Of a stretch of 37,066 nt of DNA, positions 1 to 31,426 are shown in pieces. The notes beneath the pieces were generated by a model that did no database searches, was not told the DNA's origin, and saw nothing but the letters and a program-made list of their open reading frames with translations. The position numbers and the translations under genes are program-made. Position 1 is the stretch's first letter; each line of letters begins with the position of its first letter. This DNA comes from Octopus sinensis (lineage: Eukaryota). The stretch lies in assembly GCF_006345805.1 (NCBI RefSeq), contig NW_021835913.1, positions 1-37,066 on the forward strand, given 5' to 3'.

Positions 1-45
1 CTAGTTAAGCGACGGCTTTGAGGCTGCCTCGTTGTATCATATATA

Positions 46-260
46 TTTCTTTACTACCCACAAGGGGCTAAACACAGAGGGGACAGACAAAGGGATTAAG
101 TCGATTACATCGACCCCAGTGCGTAACTGGTACTTAATTTATCGACCCCGAAAGGATGAAAGGCAAAGTCGACCTCGGCGGAATTTGAACTCGGAACGCA
201 ACGACAGACGAAATACGGCTACGAATTTCGCCCGGCGTGCTAACGTTTCTACCAGCTCGC
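46..260 (-). mobile_element. tRNA-derived SINE, family A1 (Meta-domain-like body, tail ending GTAAAGAAA/ATAAAGAAA)
   Basis: Minus strand reads GCGAGCTGGTAGAAACGTTAGC (A-box-like) ... GAGTTCAAATTCC (B-box-like), then TTTGCCTTTCATCCTTTCGGGGTCGATAAATTAAGTACCAG. Near-identical copies at 17915, 25214, 27059, 27672 and 27936. The Meta assignment is from memory of the domain consensus. Confidence 0.85.
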
Positions 261-268
261 ATCAGACG

Positions 269-470
269 GCGAGCTGGTAGAATCGGGGAAAATACTTAGC
301 GGCGTTTCGTCCGTCTTCACGTTCTGAGTTCAAATTCCATGGAGGTCGACTTTGCATTTTCATCATTTCGGGGGTCGATGAAATAAGTACCAGTTGAGCA
401 CTGGGGTCGATGTAAATGACTTAACTCCTTCCCCCGAACTTGCTGGTCTTGTGCCAAAATTTGAAACCAT
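269..470 (+). mobile_element. SINE family A2 (same head and body as A1, alternative tail ...CTTGTGCCAAAATTTGAAACC)
   Basis: GCGAGCTGGTAGAATC head, GAGTTCAAATTCC B-box and Meta-like core. The tail recurs at about 3350-3400 and 35390-35420. Confidence 0.8.
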
Positions 471-8165: not shown

Positions 8166-8868
8166 CGCTCTAATAGATAGAGCTATTAAATTTTAGGAAC
8201 GAACTAATCTCGTTATTGTACACAGTATAAAGTAACTATATATAGACATGTATCATTGTACCTTATTCACTCTTCCTCGTTTACTCTTTTTTCATTTTTT
8301 TTGTCTTTTTTCCGTTTCTTTCGCACTTTTCTTTCCTGCTTTAACTATCTCTGTATATATTAACAGTGTTTTACTTCAATATCATTATGCATTGCAGGGT
8401 ATATGAACATCTACTAATTTTATAATCGAACTATATACTGAAAATGCGTTTCAATATGCAAATCTGCCAATCCGATTTACGTAAGCCTTCAGTAATAATG
8501 CATTTATAAGCATTATTACTGTTCATAGAACAGTTGAACGTGCAGTATAGAAATCAGTGTAGATCTTTCAATCAAGTTCTAGACAATGTTTGATATAAAT
8601 AGCTATTTTCTATAAATTGTCTTCTCAGGCAAAGGAAAGAGGGTGGTTTTGTTCTCTGAAGAGTGAACAACAAACTTTGAGGCAAGAGAGGACAGTCTCC
8701 TACATATTTCTGGGTACAAAGAGAATAAGATGCATTCACAACAGTTAATGACTACACAGTGAAATACGTACAAAGTAAAGCTGAACTGCATTCAACTTCG
8801 TCCTGTGTTTAAATATTTATTGATGTGTTTGCGTATCTACGTACATATAACTATTTCTGTCTGTCTGC

Positions 8869-9296
<428 letters not shown>

Positions 9297-11467
9297 GCCG
9301 TGCCGGGCCGGACCATCCATGACAACCTCCACCTGATGCGCTACATCATAGACAGGGTAGTTAACGAACCTGGCATGGGTGGGGCGCTGATCAATTTGGA
9401 TCAATCGAAAGCTTTCGATAGGGTGGACCATCGATACTTGGAGGCAGTCCTCAGAGCGGCTGGCTTCGGTCCTGTCTTCTGCGGCTGGATAGCCGCTTTG
9501 TACAGAGGCATCCGTTCGGCAATTCGCGTAAATAGACATCTATCGAGACCTTTCGACATCGCACGTTCGGTCCGTCAGGGATGCCCCCTCTCGTCGATTC
9601 TATACGTATTGACTCTCAAGCCATTATTGCGGAAGCTGGCAACTCTGAGGGGCATCCCGCGAGAACTGGGATGCGGGACGAGCGTGTCTGCATACGCGGA
9701 CGACGTCACCGTCATAGTGTCTAGCCACGAGCACATCGAGCAGGTCGGCGAGACACTGAAAAACTACGAAGCGGTGACAGGAGCGAAAATCAACCGGGAA
9801 AAGTCAGTGGGCTTGCGACTAGGCACCTGGAGAAGCAAGCCCATGCCGTCCACCAGCGCCTCCGTCGTCGGACGCTGGACCGACGGTCCGGTCGAGTTGC
9901 TCGGGGTCTGGTTCGGTCCGGACCTCCAAATGGAGAAGAACTGGAACGAGATAACGAGTAGGGTGGTCACTCTCGCCCGGCAATGGGCCGAGAGGAAACT
10001 GTCCCTAAAAGGTCGGGCGGAGGTGGCGAACACGTAAATCGCGTCCGTCATCTACTACCGCCTGACCGTCGTGCCTTGTCCCGACCCTACCATCACCAAA
10101 CTAGAACGCATTCTCTTTCGCTTCTTGTGGAAAGGATGCGTCCCGATGGTCAGGCGATCCATTTGCTGTCAACACCCGTTAAAAGGAGGACTGGGCATGC
10201 CGTGGTTGATGATGTGCAGACACGCGCTGAGACTGCGACATCTCAGGCTCGTCGCAGACGACGAACTGGTGTGGTCGCCGTTTGTGAGGCACGCTTTCCC
10301 GCAACTCGTCTCCTTGACCGAACTGCAGTCGTGGATCAAAAAGAGGCCGAGGACGGGCGATGGCACCGCGAGTGTCGCGTTGCTCTCAAGCAACTCTGCC
10401 GTCCTGGGTCGACCTTGAGTGACTCCATCACAACCAAAGCATTCTATAGGGGATTAGTGGAGGGGAGGTACGACGACGAGCTCGGGGCGAACCTGGACGT
10501 CGACGAGGAATACCTGACCCGCCTGTTCGGGACGACTTTCGGGCCAGGGCCCATGGACAACTTCCAGCGATCCCTGGCCTGGCAGTACTACCGAGAAGCG
10601 CTACCCGTTCGGGATAAGCTCTACAGACACGGCTCGAGAAACACGGGGCCGACCTGCCCAAGATGCGGTCAGAGCGACGAAACCGTTCTGCACGCACTCG
10701 TGCAGTGTCCAACAATTTCCGACCTGTGGGCTTATGTCGAACAACTGCTGTCACGTGTGGGACGAGTTGGTTTATCAGCTGAGTCTATCGTCAATATTGT
10801 CACGCCTCCTTCCTTCAAACGGGAAGGAAGAGCTATTTTCATCATCCTTGTGGCTATGGCGAAAGGATGTATCTGGTGGACGCGTCTGATAGGATTGGAG
10901 ACAAACACTTTCCTCTCTGGTCAATCTCTCATCAACTTCTTCAAGTACCACTTGAAAAGGAAAGTGAGAGTAGAGAGGCAAGTTTTGTCTAGCGAATGTT
11001 TTAAAAAAAGATGGGTGAATGTAACAAGGATGGCACGTATGAATGACGAAGCAACCTTGAGCATAATCCTATGAACCCAGAAATTGAAAACAGAGGGTTA
11101 CCCACTTGCAAACAAATGTGGCAACATATAACAATATTGACCGAGGTTACCGTGGTCTTTTTCGTAGGCTTTTCTTCCCACGGATAAACCTTATCTGCTT
11201 TCCCCTTTACACCGTACATCATGACACTGTGATACACGATCCCTATTGATCGTTTTTTTTTAATCTGCCCCTTTTTTCCTCTTTTCTCTTCTTTTTTCTT
11301 TTTTCTTTTCTTTTGTTTCTCTTCCTTTTTTTCTTTTTTCTTTTTTCCCTTTTACGATCCCTTTTGATCGAAAACCTACGCCACTTTTTTTCTCATCCCC
11401 CAAAAGAAAAGCTCTACCTTATAATTTGTCCCATCTGTGTGCTGCCCTGTGTGGCCAATAAAGAAAC

Positions 11468-11470
<3 letters not shown>
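9297..11470 (+). mobile_element. 5'-truncated Tx1-clade (L1 group) LINE: RT, C-terminal zinc-binding motif and 3' UTR
   Basis: AVPGRTIHDNL, LDQSKAFDRVDH, VRQGCPLS, AYADD, GGLGMP and CPRCGQSDETVLHALVQC motifs. One nonsense codon (10035-10037) and one frameshift (about 10360); ORF ends at 11074; AATAAA at 11457-11462. Confidence 0.93.

Positions 11471-11513
<43 letters not shown>
11471..11513. repeat. (TCTA)n microsatellite, 3' flank of the Tx1
   Basis: Direct reading. Confidence 0.95.
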
Positions 11514-17914: not shown

Positions 17915-18137
17915 TTTCTTTATTACTCACAAAGGGTTAAACATAGAGGGGACAAACAAAGACAGACAAAGGGATTAAGTCGATTACATCGACCCCAGTG
18001 CGTAACCGGTACTTTATTTTTCGACCCCGAAAGGATGAAAGGCAAAGTCGACCACGGCGGAATTTGAACTCGGAACGTAACGACAGACGAAATAAGGCTA
18101 CGCATTTCGCCCGGCGTGCTAACGTTTCTGCCAGCTC
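17915..18137 (-). mobile_element. SINE family A1, full length
   Basis: Matches 46-260. Confidence 0.85.
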
Positions 18138-25213: not shown

Positions 25214-25350
25214 GCCTCCCTTTCATCCTTTCGTGGTCGATTAAATAAGTACCAGTTACGCACTGGCGTTGATGTAATCGACTTAATCCCTTTGTCTGTC
25301 CTTGTTTGTCCCCTCTATGTTTAGCTCCTTGTGGGCAATAAAGAAATAAG
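25214..25350 (+). mobile_element. SINE family A1, 5'-truncated
   Basis: Core plus tail ...TTGTGGGCAATAAAGAAATAAG. Confidence 0.85.
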
Positions 25351-25419: not shown

Positions 25420-25840
25420 TTTGAGAGGGTTGGAGTAATCGATACCATTGGCCTTAGTATTTGAGTGGTACTTTTCTTTATCAATCCCGAAAGAATGAAA
25501 AACAGAGTTGACCTCATAGAAATGTGATCTCAGAGCGTAGGGAGAGCCATGACAAAAATAGCAAAACGTCTTTTTACAATTCTCTGATGATTCTTCAAAC
25601 ACGTTTACTTCGTGTATTTCTCAATATTGTTTATAATTTAGGCACAAGGCCATTAAATCTGAGGGAATGGAAATAATCGATACCATTAACCCTAGTACTA
25701 CATTGATACTTTATTTTATTGATCCCGAAATGATAAAAGAAAAACCGACCTCGGCGAGATTTGAACTCGGAATGTAAAAATGCCGCAACAAATACAACAA
25801 AGTAATTTTTCCGAATTTCTCAGTTCTGCCAGTTAGCCGC
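25420..25840 (-). mobile_element. Two degenerate family-A SINEs
   Basis: GTTGACCTC / CCGACCTCGGCGAGATTTGAACTC and CCCGAAA core remnants. Confidence 0.55.
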
Positions 25841-26511: not shown

Positions 26512-27281
26512 ACTAGCAGTTTTGAGGGGAGGGAGTCAATCGGTACCATTGAACCCAGTACTTGACTGGTATTTCATTTTATTAAGCTCGAAAGGAGGAA
26601 AAGCAAAGTTGATGCCAAAGGAATTTGAACTCGGAATGTACAGAGCTGGAAGAAATGCCGCAAGGTATTTTTTCCTAACGCTGTACCGATTCTGCCTCCT
26701 AGTCGCCTTCGTTTCTGATTTAGGATACAAAGCCAACAATTTGGAAGGGCGGGGGTCACCACCTATTCTTGTAGATGACTTGGTATTTCATTTATTCAAA
26801 AATCCCGAAGGGTTACGAAATGAAGTTGTGGCCCGGTTACATGCAACCGGGCCACAACCTGCCCAAATATCCTTTTCTACTAAGCACAAGGCCTTAAATT
26901 TTGGGGGAGGGGCTAGTCGATTAGATCGACCACAGTACACAACTGGTACTTAATTTATCAACCCTGAAAGGATGAAAGGCAAAGTCGACCTCGGCGGAAT
27001 TTGAACTCAGGACGTAAAAACAGTCGAAGCATTTCACCCGGCGTGCTAACGCTTCTTATTTCTTTACTGCCCATAAGGGGCTACACACAGAGGGGGAAAA
27101 CTAGGACAGACAAACGGATTAAGTCCATTATATCGACCCCAGTGCGTAACTGGTACTTATTTAATCGACCCCGAAAGGATGAAAGGCAAAGTTGACCTCG
27201 GCGGAATTTGAACTCACAACGTAACGGCAGACGAAATACTGCTAAGCATTTCGCCCGGCGTGTTAACGTTTCTCCCAGCTC
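26512..27281 (-). mobile_element. Cluster of four family-A SINEs of different ages (about 26512-26707, 26718-26830, 26871-27056, 27059-27281)
   Basis: Recurrent GGAATTTGAACTC and ACTGGTACTT core motifs, all on the same strand. Confidence 0.7.
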
Positions 27282-27671
27282 ACTGACTTCTGACCCAGAT
27301 ATTCTGCTTCTTGTATGTTCAAATTGGTCAGATCTAACATCACACACCTTACCTACAGTGTCATTCTAAAAATAAGTCACAAGATAATACATGGTTAATT
27401 CAAAACAATGAGAATATATAAGCATCACATTTAGTAGAATAATCTGAATACTAGAGGTTTATAAAAAAGGTCAAGCTGGGGCAAATTTTTCGATGCTCTA
27501 ACGGTTCTGTCAGCTTGTCGCCTTATGTATATCATCAAATAATTATAAATATGCCGTCTTCGTAAATGATTTGGGTGGTATCAACAAGATTTGGCTAAAA
27601 CAAATTCTTCGATTCGCTAACAACTCTGTCAGCTGGTCGCTTTATGTGTATCGTCAAATAGTTTTAAATAT

Positions 27672-27893
27672 ATTTCTTTATTGCCCACAAGGGGCTAAAC
27701 ATAGAGGGGACAAACAAGGACAGACAAATGAATTAAGTCGATTACATCGATCCCAGTGCGTAACTGGTACTTAATTTATCGACCCAGAAAGGATGAAAGG
27801 CAAAGTCGACCTCGGCGGAATTTGAACCCAGAACATAACGGCAGACGAAATACGGCTACGCATTTCGCCTGGCTTGCTAACGATTCTGCCAGG
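27672..27893 (-). mobile_element. SINE family A1 (tandem unit 1)
   Basis: Full length; bounded by AAATAGTTTTAAATAT repeats. Confidence 0.88.
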
Positions 27894-27916
27894 TCGGCCT
27901 TTTGGCTAAGATCAAG
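27894..27916 (+). pseudogene. U2: U2 snRNA 5' fragment (nt 9-31)
   Basis: TCGGCCTTTTGGCTAAGATCAAG is a 23/23 match to the conserved metazoan U2 5' sequence. Confidence 0.85.
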
Positions 27917-27935
27917 GTGAAATAGTTTTAAATAT

Positions 27936-28160
27936 TATTTCTTTATTGCCCACAAGGGGCTAAACATAGAGGGGACAAACAAGGACAGACAAAGGGATTA
28001 AGTCGATTACATCGATCTCAGTGCGTAACTGGTACTTAATTTATCGACCCAGAAAGGATGAAAGGCAAAGTCGACCTCGGCGGAATTTGAACCCAGAACG
28101 TAACGGCAGACGAAATACGGCTACGCATTTCGCCCGTCGTGCTAACGATTCTGCCAGCTC
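27936..28160 (-). mobile_element. SINE family A1 (tandem unit 2)
   Basis: Near-identical to unit 1. Confidence 0.88.
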
Positions 28161-28180
28161 GGCCTTTTGGCTAAGGTCAA
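28158..28180 (+). pseudogene. U2: U2 snRNA 5' fragment (nt 8-30, one mismatch)
   Basis: CTCGGCCTTTTGGCTAAGGTCAA, 22/23 match. Confidence 0.8.
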
Positions 28181-28920
28181 CGTGAAATAGTTTTAAATAT
28201 ATCGTCTTCGACAATAATACGGAGTTGATGGTGGTATCCACCAGATTTGATTTTCATAGACCCGTTTCATATATGAATTCGTGTGCGGTTATACATTAAG
28301 ATGTACTGTAAGACAACTCAGTCTCCACTAGATGGCGTTACAACGAATACGCAATTAAAATTGCTGCGTGCATTAAGTAATGTTTCTTACGCTTACCGTA
28401 CACATCGGTTGAGAAGGAAACACGAAAAGTTTAAACACGCTTGTAACACTATTTATAGTATCTCAGACCATCGTAATTTTCGCATGAAGAGGCGAAACAA
28501 GGTATCGTTTTCCTATAAGCCGACGGAAGGAAATAGACCGAAAAACAAACAAAACAAAACAAGACAAAACGAAACGAAAAAGAAAACCACAAATGGAGGG
28601 AGTGCACTTATTGCCAAGAACACACATACATAATTGTATGTGTGTGTGTGTGTGTGAATGGGTAAATGCAATTGTATAAAAATGCGAATGCATGGTGGTG
28701 TTGATGTAATGGTACCAGCGTTGGTGGTGGTAGTCGTGATGGCGGTCGTGGTAATAGGAGTTAATCGCAGTGGCGTTATCTGCCATGTTTATACATAAGA
28801 GTATTTATGATATACATGTGTGTGTAGCTTGGTAGCATGTTTTCTACTTCAATAGACATTATTATATATATATGTATTTACCAATGCATCATGTTATATA
28901 TATATACATATACATACACA

Positions 28921-28996: not shown

Positions 28997-29505
28997 ATTA
29001 TTATTTGAGGGAATAAAATCCAAACTTACAAGGAAAAAGAATTCAATTTAGAAATACTAAATCAAATTCCACACAATATAATATATATATAAAATATTAG
29101 AAAAAAAACACTTTTTATCAATTCAAAAGGAATAATTAAATTACACCATCTAAAAAATTACATATAATAGAAAAGTTAAAATTAAAATAACTATAAAAAG
29201 TAAAGATTAAGTAAATTACAAAAATAATGTATATAATAGGTATTATATACATTATATTATATACATTATATACCTATTATATTATTTTTGTAATTTACTT
29301 AATCTTTACTTTTTATTGTTATTTTAATTTTAACTTTTCTATTATATGTAATTTTCTAGATGGTGTAATTTAATTATTCATTTTGAATTGATAAAAAATG
29401 TTTTTTTCTAATATTTTATATATATTATATTGTGTGGAATTTGATTTAGTATTTCTAAGTTGAATTCTTTTACCTTGTAAGTTTGGATTTTATTCCCTCA
29501 AATAA

Positions 29506-29545: not shown

Positions 29546-30967
29546 GGAGTAAACACATAAATGTGAAACAAGGTGGAAAAAAGAGTACTCAAATACCAGT
29601 GGTAGAGTAATATGCTTTATTTTAAGCAGCAGAAAATTCAACAAAATCTGTTACTCTGAGTTTCTCGTTGCCGTTCATCAGACAGTTTTTGCTAGAATGG
29701 AACTTATATATTAATTCAATCTATACTCTTACAAACGCTACACCTTTAAAAAGAAATGGACTTGTTTGATTGGCCCTTTAGAAAAAACGGTCAATCTTCG
29801 AGCGATAAACAAAAAGGTCAAAAATATATGTATATATATATAAAAAAACTTATAAAAATTATAAAATCCGAGGAAAAAACCGAGGAAAAAACCTATTGCC
29901 GTTAATGAAGACATTACAAATTAATGCATAGAAATTAAACCTGTTATAAATACTGCATATACATATTTATATTAAAATCCACATATATATATCAACATAC
30001 ACAAAAGGATGCGCGTAAACGCCATACATACATATACAGACGTATGAATATGAATCTAAATTATACACATAAAAGCATGTGTACATATATTCACGCAAAC
30101 CGTCTCGCACGCAAGCTAAAATTCATCTATGTAGCAATTCTCATATACTGAGCAAGGAGGGGGAACGAAAGAAAGGGAAAGAGAGAAAAAGGAACGAAGG
30201 AGGGGTGGGGAAAAACTTGTAGCGATGTTATTGGCGTCTATAGAGGCCAGTATACATACACAAGTTTGAATTGATACATATACATACCGTCGTGTGTATG
30301 CGTGCTTAAGCACAAGCATACTTTCACTTACACATACACAGATACGCATGCTTACAAATACATATGCTTTGCTATACACATACTTTATAAACATTCTAAT
30401 TTTGACAACATTGCTTTTTTTAAAAAAAACATTGCTTTTAAAAATGGGTGCATTAATAAAGATATATACGAAAGACATATAAAATAAAATATAACATCCT
30501 ATTTTGGGTCATTATAAATAATCAAGGTAATATAAATAATCAAGGTAATCCTATGCAATACAATAACATGAAAACAAAGTTTGTAGGTTTTTCCTAATAT
30601 ATATGTAGAAACAATAAGACTTTGCTATAGGTCCGTCGTAGCGCTCAAGGTCAAAATCAAAAATCAAAAATCAAAATACAAAATATATACTCTATCCATA
30701 TGGTATATTTATATTCGACATTTTAAATTTAGCCGCGTGCCTACATAAGTTCATTAACTCACTTCTTTGATTCAAAGAATTATTGTCTTTGAATAAGATG
30801 TGCATTTTCTCTAATAAGCAAAGCCTGCACTTGAAGTTATATTTGTAAGCTCCATGCCTGTATGGTGCCGCCCTGTCCAGAATGCTCCATGTCACGTTGA
30901 AAGGTGGGGCTTCCTTTTCTTTTAGTTCCCAGACATATTTTGCTAGGCTGGTTTTCTTCCTATTCTC
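29544..30967 (-). mobile_element. Penelope-like element, inverted 3' copy (left arm)
   Basis: Encodes ENRKKTSLAKYVWELK...CRLCLLEK...LNQRSELMNLCRHAAKF*, followed by a long UTR and a hammerhead. 29615-30967 is the reverse complement of 31214-32562. Confidence 0.9.
29643..29689 (-). ncRNA. Minimal type I hammerhead, left arm
   Basis: AAAACTGT-CTGATGA-ACG-GCAA-CGA-GAA-ACT-CAG-AGT-A-ACAGATTTT. Stem II is weak (A.A closing pair). Confidence 0.65.
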
Positions 30968-31426
30968 GCCTCTTACATTAGCCAACATAATAGGAAGCTA
31001 ATTGAGATTAGACATGGTGCCGAGCCCATTAAGAAATGTAATTTCAAAAACGAAAGCTCCTGTCCGTTAGAAGGGAAATGTCTAGTGAAAGGAGTAGTTT
31101 ATAGAGCCAATGTGCAAGTGGAAGGCTCATCGGAATACAAGACATACACAGGGGCTTCAGAAAATTCATTTAAAACAAGATTTTATTCTCATAAGAATTC
31201 TTTTAAATACCCAGAGAATAGGAAGAAAACCAGCCTAGCAAAATATGTCTGGGAACTAAAAGAAAAGGAAGCCCCACCTTTCAACGTGACATGGAGCATT
31301 CTGGACAGGGCGGCACCATACAGGCATGGAGCTTACAAATATAATTTCAAGTGCAGGCTTTGCTTATTAGAGAAAATGCACATCTTATTCAAAGACAATA
31401 ATTCTTTGAATCAAAGAGTGAGTTAA
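30968..31426 (+). pseudogene. PLE GIY-YIG endonuclease fragment with Zn-finger-like linker
   Basis: Open frame SQHNRKL...CNFKNESSCPLEGKCLVKGVVYRA...YTGASENSFKTRFYSHKNSF (VVY...YTG is the GIY-YIG motif). A 1-bp deletion near 31418 truncates the C-terminus, which is intact in the left arm. Confidence 0.88.

What the first reader, a model, noticed from the sequence alone, without database searches (positions are those of the whole stretch)
27656..28200. SINE fused to an antisense U2 snRNA fragment inside a 16-bp direct repeat, then tandemly duplicated
Seen: the structure is X-[SINE(-) + U2 nt 9-31(+)]-X-[SINE(-) + U2(+)]-X, with X = AAATAGTTTTAAATAT at 27656, 27920 and 28185. U2 is antisense to the SINE and joins its head through shared (C)TCG microhomology. 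Established: 3'-truncated U2 retro-fragments and snRNA-retroposon chimeras exist, normally in the same orientation, and twin priming yields inverted segments. Inference: a twin-priming-like event on two different RNAs (SINE RNA and U2), followed by unequal exchange between the TSDs. A Pol II read-through on the minus strand would carry sequence complementary to U2 stem I, part of the U2/U6 pairing region.
Basis: partly seen in the sequence, partly recalled or inferred. Interest (0 to 1): 0.7.

Follow-up and report, generated by a model that had tools for sequence, protein, structure and literature searches.

The report
Octopus SINE with inverted U2 fragment, duplicated
An octopus short retroposon (SINE) picked up 24-27 bases of U2 spliceosomal RNA in reverse orientation when it inserted, and the insert later doubled by exchange between its flanking repeats; this is a non-mammalian example of a chimera type already described in humans, with no sign of function.

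Summary
AAATAGTTTTAAATAT occurs exactly at 27656, 27920 and 28185. It brackets two 264/265-bp units that differ at 10 substitutions and 1 indel. Each unit is a full-length minus-strand SINE whose head abuts plus-strand U2 snRNA nt 8/9-31(33). Other SINE copies in the window end at GAGCTGG/GCGAGCTGG, so the U2 piece is not part of the SINE. The overlap at the joint is 3-4 nt, (C)TCG.

New evidence: the flanks belong to an older 119-bp tandem repeat. Its neighbouring unit aligns across the insertion point without a gap. SINE and U2 therefore entered together, inside one 16-bp target-site duplication. The SINE matched only an Octopus vulgaris protein. Its 3' tail matches the 3' end of a LINE in the same window.

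The geometry fits twin priming on a second RNA followed by unequal exchange between the duplicated target sites. This is not new in kind. Doucet et al. 2015 describe inverted, 3'-truncated U1/U2/U5/U6 chimeras with L1 or SVA inside one target-site duplication.

The main rival is a 5'-extended transcript or subfamily from a source copy sitting antisense in a U2 gene. I could not test it, because no octopus genome search was available. The U2 parts show no constraint. Ordinary to modest interest.

The parts
27656..27671 (.). X1, left copy of the 16-bp target-site duplication AAATAGTTTTAAATAT
   Evidence: Exact match. Its counterpart X' in the paralogous repeat unit is a single copy.
27672..27896 (-). 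SINE, unit 1, full length (consensus positions 2-226), tRNA-like head with a B-box-like GGTTCAAATTCC
   Evidence: blastn against the window-derived consensus, 95.6%; alignment A1.
27893..27919 (+). U2 snRNA fragment, unit 1: nt 8 (mutated to G), nt 9-31 exact, an extra G, then nt 32-33. 27893-27896 is the (C)TCG overlap with the SINE head.
27920..27935 (.). X2, middle copy of the target-site duplication, shared by the two units
27936..28161 (-). SINE, unit 2, full length, with one extra base at the tail junction
   Evidence: blastn 97.3%; pairwise alignment of the two units.
28158..28184 (+). U2 snRNA fragment, unit 2: nt 8-31 with A26>G and G31>C, an extra G, then nt 32-33. 28158-28161 is the CTCG overlap.
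28185..28200 (.). X3, right copy of the target-site duplication
27460..27594 (.). Neighbouring unit of the older 119-bp tandem repeat, carrying X' (27537-27552) followed directly by GCCGTCTTCG...GGTGGTATCAACAAGATTTG. It serves as a paralogous empty site.
   Evidence: It aligns colinearly with left flank + one X + right flank: score 138 against 28.5 +/- 5.2 for shuffles, with no gap at the insertion point; repeat D6.
28201..28249 (.). Right flank, the start of the next 119-bp repeat unit (ATCGTCTTCG...GGTGGTATCCACCAGATTTG)
   Evidence: (D12).
11425..11466 (+). 3' end of a 5'-truncated LINE (RT at 9303-10034, zf-RVT within 9983-11071), 81% identical to the last 42 nt of the SINE. It is the likely source of the reverse transcriptase that mobilises the SINE.

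Best explanation
One LINE-mediated retroposition event in an octopus genome inserted a full-length tRNA-like SINE at the target AAATAGTTTTAAATAT. The plus-strand nick after X primed reverse transcription of the SINE RNA from its LINE-like tail. The staggered minus-strand nick, 16 bp away, gave a second 3'-OH. That end primed reverse transcription of a U2 snRNA, or of a U2-headed RNA, starting internally at about nt 33, in the single-stranded stretch just after stem-loop I. The two cDNA ends then annealed through the 3-4 nt CGAG/CTCG overlap. This removed the cDNA of U2 nt 1-7 and left U2 nt 8-33 inverted against the SINE head, all inside one 16-bp target-site duplication. Later, unequal exchange or slippage between the two X copies doubled the [SINE+U2+X] unit, and both copies have since decayed neutrally. 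Shown: the anatomy, the single insertion, the target-site duplication, and the age of the duplication. Inferred: that the second template was RNA and was primed from the second nick (twin priming), and the order of the joining steps.
For: X is exact three times and the unit is doubled. The SINE's canonical 5' end lies inside the CTCG overlap, so U2 nt 12-33 is extra sequence. The U2 identity is far beyond chance and Rfam picks U2 as the best family. The reconstructed empty site aligns without a gap to the neighbouring paralogous repeat unit, so SINE and U2 lie inside a single duplicated target. On the minus strand, rc(X) is followed directly by U2 antisense, which is a U2 cDNA extended from the second-nick 3' end. 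The fragment ends at nt 31-33, where the Rfam consensus structure is unpaired. This matches the published rule that internal priming on snRNAs occurs in single-stranded segments (PMC4476161). There is direct precedent: inverted, 3'-truncated U1, U2, U5 and U6 copies joined to L1 or SVA inside one target-site duplication, assigned to twin priming (PMC4476161 section 6), and antisense 5S, tRNA-half and U5 chimeras. A LINE with the same 3' tail sits in the window. The 10 unit-specific substitutions show the duplication is old and real.
Against: There is only one locus, and I could not run a genome-wide or orthologous comparison. There is no contiguous complementarity between the X primer end and U2 at the priming site, and an unexplained extra G sits between U2 nt 31 and 32 in both units. 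Published cases do show junction complementarity. The partner LINE recognises a specific tail ('stringent' type), and such LINEs are thought to copy foreign RNAs rarely (section 10 of PMC4476161). Twin priming has been documented for mammalian L1, not for this LINE. O. vulgaris is reported to hold SINE/U families, so the donor may not be U2 snRNA itself.
Confidence: 0.55

Rival explanations
1. 5'-extended transcript or subfamily. A source SINE had inserted antisense into a U2 gene or pseudogene at nt 8-11. A transcript started in the flank, or was 5'-truncated, at U2 nt 33, and the SINE with its 27-nt antisense-U2 leader was retroposed as one RNA.
For: SINE copies with 5' extensions copied from the flank of a master copy lying in the opposite direction are documented (SINEU-2B, PMC4494074). 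Tx1-clade LINEs that target U2 genes (Keno) exist, and L1-Tx1 LINEs are reported active in O. vulgaris. The anatomy at this locus is equally compatible.
Against: The other SINE copies seen (five of this family in the window, plus one 5'-truncated, and one in L002) have unrelated flanks and no U2, so the family does not target U2. An internal Pol III promoter should start transcription near the SINE's first base, not 27 nt upstream (established knowledge). This model needs two rare events where twin priming needs one. The nine SINE-derived peptides found in the protein collection show no U2-derived extension, but this is a very small and mixed sample.
Confidence: 0.2
2. DNA-level filler. A piece of U2 gene DNA, of a U2 pseudogene, or of a U2-headed SINE/U element was captured at the 5' junction during end-joining repair of the insertion intermediate, without reverse transcription from the second nick.
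For: The short overlap (CTCG) and the extra G are typical of end joining. SINE/U families are reported in O. vulgaris.
Against: The orientation and position are exactly those expected for a cDNA primed from the second nick. The fragment's end falls in the single-stranded region, as for RNA-primed cases. U2 RNA is far more abundant than free U2 DNA (inference).
Confidence: 0.1
3. Two independent insertions at the same point. A U2 retro-fragment and a SINE arrived separately, and one of them made no target-site duplication of its own.
For: None specific. Nested insertions are common here, for example a SINE inside a SINE head at 27056/27057.
Against: Both parts lie inside one 16-bp duplication. 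The paralogous repeat unit has neither part. A 25-nt fragment truncated at both ends would also be an unusual independent insert.
Confidence: 0.05
4. The tandem duplication is an assembly artefact, so there is a single unit in reality.
For: None from the sequence.
Against: The units differ at 10 substitutions and 1 indel, some at CpG sites. Collapsed or duplicated reads would give near-identical copies.
Confidence: 0.03

Closest known systems
Inverted snRNA/L1 and snRNA/SVA chimeras formed by twin priming (Doucet et al. 2015, Mol Biol Evol, PMC4476161; 'twin' cases in Group IV)
   Same: The snRNA piece is in the opposite orientation at the 5' side of the retroposon. It is 3'-truncated in a single-stranded region. 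Both parts lie inside one target-site duplication. A U2/L1 case is listed.
   Different: The partner here is a full-length tRNA-like SINE rather than a 5'-truncated L1. The host is an octopus, and the LINE shares a specific 3' tail with the SINE rather than using poly(A). The U2 piece also lacks its first 7 nt. There is no clear primer/snRNA complementarity. The product was later tandemly duplicated.
Antisense 5S rRNA, tRNA-half and U5 chimeras with LINE-1 (bioRxiv 10.1101/2025.02.02.635956)
   Same: Short 5' parts of abundant small RNAs, antisense to the retroposon, flanked by target-site duplications and attributed to twin priming.
   Different: Mammalian L1 only, and U2 is not among the recurrent classes quoted in the passages I read.
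Template-switch chimeras (U6/L1, U6/Alu; Buzdin 2002-2003, Garcia-Perez 2007, as cited in PMC4476161)
   Same: An snRNA joined to the 5' end of a retroposon in one insertion event.
   Different: Those are in the same orientation and usually carry the full-length snRNA from nt 1. Here the piece is inverted and lacks nt 1-7.
SINEU (snRNA-headed SINEs; Kojima 2015, PMC4494074)
   Same: U2-derived sequence at the 5' end of a SINE, with 5' additions and 5' extensions documented.
   Different: SINEU heads are in sense orientation and form a propagating family. Here the piece is antisense, 24-27 nt long, and seen at one locus only.
Tandem transposable-element dimers with n+1 target-site duplications (unequal exchange between flanking direct repeats)
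   Same: The X-unit-X-unit-X structure.
   Different: Nothing unusual. The 16-bp homology is short, so slippage is as likely as meiotic unequal crossing-over.

Membership tests
Inverted snRNA/retroposon chimera by twin priming (Doucet 2015) | snRNA segment and retroposon in opposite transcriptional orientation, with the snRNA at the retroposon's 5' side | tested here: met
   U2 is on the plus strand and the SINE on the minus strand, and U2 abuts the SINE head.
Inverted snRNA/retroposon chimera by twin priming (Doucet 2015) | Both parts enclosed by a single target-site duplication | tested here: met
   16-bp X on both sides. The paralogous empty site has one X' and no insert.
Inverted snRNA/retroposon chimera by twin priming (Doucet 2015) | snRNA 3'-truncated within a single-stranded segment | tested here: met
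   The fragment ends at nt 31-33, just after stem-loop I, where the Rfam U2 consensus structure is unpaired.
Inverted snRNA/retroposon chimera by twin priming (Doucet 2015) | Complementarity between the second-nick primer and the snRNA at the priming point | tested here: not met
   There is no contiguous match between the end of X and U2 nt 32-38. The only match is TAGT, offset by 3 nt, and an extra G is present. This feature supports the model but does not define the class.
Inverted snRNA/retroposon chimera by twin priming (Doucet 2015) | Endonuclease cleavage motif that fits the retroposon's orientation | tested here: inconclusive
   The nick follows ...AAATAT. SINE copies 177 and 18056 also have ATAT next to the tail. 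The preference of this LINE's endonuclease is unknown.
Inverted snRNA/retroposon chimera by twin priming (Doucet 2015) | A unique event rather than a propagating family | not testable with these tools
   No octopus genome search was available. The metagenome scan for the joint found nothing, but the SINE-core control also found nothing.
tRNA-derived SINE with a LINE-derived tail | Dispersed short copies with a defined 5' end and a 3' tail shared with a LINE | tested here: met
   At least 7 copies of this family in the window, plus relatives. The tail is 81% identical over 42 nt to the LINE 3' end at 11425-11466.
tRNA-derived SINE with a LINE-derived tail | tRNA-like head with Pol III A and B boxes | tested here: inconclusive
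   The B-box-like GGTTCAAATTCC/GAGTTCAAATTCC is present and the A box is partial. ARAGORN and the Rfam tRNA model give no call. The fold is cloverleaf-like but only z = -1.6.
SINEU (snRNA-headed SINE) | U1/U2-derived head in sense orientation at the 5' end of a multi-copy family | tested here: not met
   The U2 piece is antisense to the SINE and is absent from all other copies seen.
Template-switch snRNA chimera (U6/L1 type) | Same orientation, with the snRNA reaching its own 5' end | tested here: not met
   Inverted orientation, and nt 1-7 are missing.

The most novel reading that the evidence does not exclude
The antisense-U2 leader is not an accident. A minus-strand transcript of these units, or of a wider SINE subfamily carrying the same leader, would pair with U2 stem-loop I and the U2/U6 helix region and so modulate splicing in octopus tissues.
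Probability: 0.02. Interest if true: 0.7.

Novelty: new member of a known kind. Interest (0 to 1): 0.27.

Why it matters
If the twin-priming reading holds, this is an example outside mammals, and with a SINE rather than an L1, of a second RNA being copied from the second nick of a LINE-type integration. It would suggest that this side reaction is a general property of target-primed reverse transcription, including for LINEs that recognise a specific 3' tail. Such junctions can serve as markers of which small RNAs are near the integration complex. The later doubling shows how a target-site duplication can seed a tandem repeat. None of this changes current understanding. It is a clean, well-bounded case for a genome-wide survey.

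Tried and rejected
- **Joint scan.** A metagenome-contig scan for the SINE-head/U2 joint found nothing. The control scan for the SINE core also found nothing, so the collection holds no octopus DNA and the test says nothing.
- **RT homologue locus.** I fetched the locus of an RT homologue (L001, an ENA assembly). It contains no copy of this SINE and comes from an unrelated organism.
- **Forward-frame peptide search.** A protein search with the peptide that reads through flank, X, antisense U2 and SINE head gave one hit, an O. vulgaris hypothetical protein that is another SINE copy without U2.
- **Reverse-frame profile search.** A profile ending in the U2-derived residues gave nine short proteins. 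None had the U2-derived ending, but the sample is tiny and mixed.
- **Exact look-up of window ORFs.** None of ten window ORFs was found. I mis-specified the four minus-strand references, including the stop codon and dropping the start, so only the six plus-strand look-ups count.
- **tRNA calls.** ARAGORN and the Rfam tRNA model give no call on the SINE head.
- **TTTGGCTAA at 27592-27600.** I rejected this as a third U2 trace. It corresponds to the SINE's own GTAGCC loop region in a decayed SINE.
- **TAGT in X as priming homology with U2 nt 34-37.** It is offset by three unpaired bases, so I did not count it.
- **Longer target-site duplication (CGTSAAATAG...).** It is possible (16-19 bp) but needs a mismatch.

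Full report

Yes. AAATAGTTTTAAATAT (X) is exact at 27656, 27920 and 28185, and no shuffle of the window reaches that count. A 2-mismatch relative, X', lies at 27537.

Tandem Repeats Finder reports a 265-bp unit, 2.1 copies, 95% matches, over 27652-28200. A pairwise alignment of the two units shows 10 substitutions and one 1-nt indel at the tail junction.

Each unit contains a SINE on the minus strand. The same element occurs elsewhere in the window: full length at 45-260, 17915-18137 and 27058-27281, and truncated at 25219-25347 and 26915-27056. More distant relatives lie at 25677, 26530 and 35434.

Aligning the copies (A1) fixes the canonical 5' end at GAGCTGG, or GCGAGCTGG in one copy, and the 3' end at ...CAATAAAGAAAT.

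In both focal units the sequence beyond the head is TCGGCCTTTTGGCTAAGATCAAG-G-TG. On the plus strand this is U2 snRNA nt 9-31, exact in unit 1 (27894-27916). In unit 2 it is nt 8-31 with two mismatches (28158-28181). An extra G and nt 32-33 follow in both.

A 22-mer of this stretch occurs nowhere else in the window, with 0.00 expected by chance. In E-value mode Rfam picks U2 as the best family (21.1 and 19.7 bits). That is below the gathering score, as it must be for a 25-nt piece. At gathering thresholds the window has no RNA family hit at all. The overlap between the SINE head and U2 is 3-4 nt, (C)TCG.

**2. What surrounds it?**

It comprises D6 at 27460-27552 and 27579-27671, plus a partial third unit after X3.

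I joined the left flank, one X and the right flank in a script. The result aligns colinearly with the neighbouring repeat unit: score 138 against 28.5 +/- 5.2 for shuffles, with no gap at the insertion point. The two junctions read:

- Neighbouring unit: ...TATCATC-AAATAATTATAAATAT-GCCGTCTTCG...
- Joined flanks: ...TATCGTC-AAATAGTTTTAAATAT-ATCGTCTTCG...

This is an internal stand-in for the empty site. It shows that the target held a single X with neither SINE nor U2. The two therefore entered together, and X is a 16-bp target-site duplication. It could be up to 19 bp if one mismatch is allowed.

The 119-bp repeat is itself a decayed 5' part of an older SINE. This explains a misleading TTTGGCTAA at 27592.

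**3. Organism and machinery**

The peptide that reads through the SINE matched only one protein in the large collection. It is a hypothetical protein of Octopus vulgaris. Its locus (L002, chromosome OX597819.1) carries a 94% copy of the SINE with an ordinary flank.

The reverse transcriptase in the window has its best named relative in the cuttlefish Acanthosepion pharaonis. The window is therefore from an octopus.

A 5'-truncated LINE lies in the window, with an RT domain at 9303-10034 and zf-RVT within 9983-11071. It ends at 11425-11466 with 42 nt that are 81% identical to the SINE's tail. This is the classic SINE/LINE shared-tail relationship. It names the likely source of the enzyme.

I could not assign the SINE to one of the named octopus families. 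OK, OR1 and OR2 of Ohshima and Okada 1994 are the candidates.

**4. Mechanism**

On the plus strand, X is followed by the complement of the SINE tail. This is first-strand cDNA primed from the plus-strand nick.

On the minus strand, rc(X) is followed directly by antisense U2. This is a U2 cDNA extended from the 3'-OH of the second, staggered nick.

The two cDNAs meet at CTCG/CGAG. Annealing there and trimming a 7-nt flap accounts for the missing U2 nt 1-7.

The U2 piece ends at nt 31-33, immediately after stem-loop I, where the consensus structure is unpaired.

It is also a published class. Doucet et al. 2015 describe U5, U1, U2 and U6 copies that are 3'-truncated, inverted relative to L1 or SVA and enclosed in one target-site duplication. 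They assign these to twin priming, with truncations in single-stranded segments (PMC4476161). A 2025 preprint adds antisense 5S, tRNA-half and U5 chimeras.

The case here differs in four ways:

- The partner is a full-length SINE.
- The host is a mollusc.
- The LINE is tail-specific rather than poly(A)-dependent.
- I see no primer/snRNA complementarity, and there is an unexplained extra G.

**5. The duplication**

The array is exactly two units plus one X, and the outer flanks match the empty site. The exchange therefore took place between the two copies of the target-site duplication, by unequal crossing-over or by slippage.

Against the SINE consensus, 4 differences are shared by both units, 6 are private to unit 1 and 2 are private to unit 2. 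The duplication is therefore old and real, not an assembly artefact.

The U2-specific parts carry 2 private changes in 46 nt. The SINE parts carry 7 in 444 nt (Fisher p = 0.20; p = 0.08 if the overlap base is included). There is no sign of constraint on the U2 complementarity.

**6. Rivals**

The serious rival is a 5'-extended transcript from a source SINE lying antisense in a U2 gene. It would make this a member of a subfamily.

Such 5' extensions from oppositely oriented flanks are documented for SINEU-2B. U2-targeting Tx1 LINEs (Keno) exist. O. vulgaris is reported to have active L1-Tx1 LINEs and SINE/U families.

Three points count against it. All other copies of this family that I could see have unrelated flanks. 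An internal Pol III promoter should not start 27 nt upstream of the SINE's first base. And the model needs two rare events where twin priming needs one.

I could not test it. The metagenome collection holds no octopus DNA, since the SINE-core control also gave zero. The protein-based samples of SINE flanks are tiny.

The other rivals rank lower: DNA-level filler capture, two independent insertions, and an assembly artefact.

The donor could also be a U2-headed SINE/U RNA rather than U2 snRNA. Twenty-four universal U2 bases cannot tell the two apart.

**7. Verdict**

The structural interpretation is the best-supported one, with confidence about 0.55 for twin priming. Confidence is much higher for a single insertion inside one target-site duplication followed by doubling through that duplication.

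It is a new member of a known kind, of modest interest. Its main value is as a seed for a genome-wide survey of inverted small-RNA captures at SINE heads in cephalopods.

Noticed in passing
window 45-470: Two full-length SINEs of related families lie head to head, one at 45-260 on the minus strand and one at 269 to about 470 on the plus strand, separated by only 8 nt (ATCAGACG). The outer flanks, ATCATATATAT and ATTATATAAAT, match at 9 of 11 positions as a direct repeat, but they are AT-rich. This could be a second twin-priming-type product, with a second SINE RNA as template, or two independent insertions.
   Followed up: partly
window 8850-11510: A 5'-truncated LINE (RT plus zf-RVT) has its last 42 nt matching the SINE tail. 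It is flanked on both sides by (TATC)n: upstream this is the 'YLSI' repeat ORF, and downstream it runs 11467-11510. Either the LINE prefers this microsatellite as a target, or its own 3' repeat has expanded.
   Followed up: partly
window 27460-27671 and 28201-28249: An older 119-bp tandem repeat (76% between units) is itself a decayed 5' part of a SINE plus its flank. It is the target into which the SINE+U2 unit inserted.
   Followed up: yes
window 26915-27281: A full-length SINE (27058-27281) is inserted into the head of a 5'-truncated SINE of another subfamily (26915-27056). The probable short target-site duplication is around CTTCT.
   Followed up: partly
window 29006-29500: A large AT-rich palindrome has 153-nt arms that are 90% complementary with no spacer (29102-29254 and 29255-29407), nested in a further 100-nt inverted pair.
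   Followed up: no
window 30692-30988 (-) and 31085-31426 (+): Two ORFs in inverted orientation share the peptide ...KKTSLAKYVWELKEKEAPPFNVTWSILDRAAPYRHGAYKYNFKCRLCLLEK.... Pfam gives no hit for the plus-strand copy. They are probably an inverted duplicate of an uncharacterised mobile-element gene.
   Followed up: no
window 27936-28184, minus strand: In unit 2 the antisense-U2 stretch GUUGACCUU can pair with the SINE's GAGGUCGAC. This gives the 134-nt leader plus head a fold z-score of -3.6. It depends on the two derived substitutions of unit 2, so I read it as chance.
   Followed up: partly
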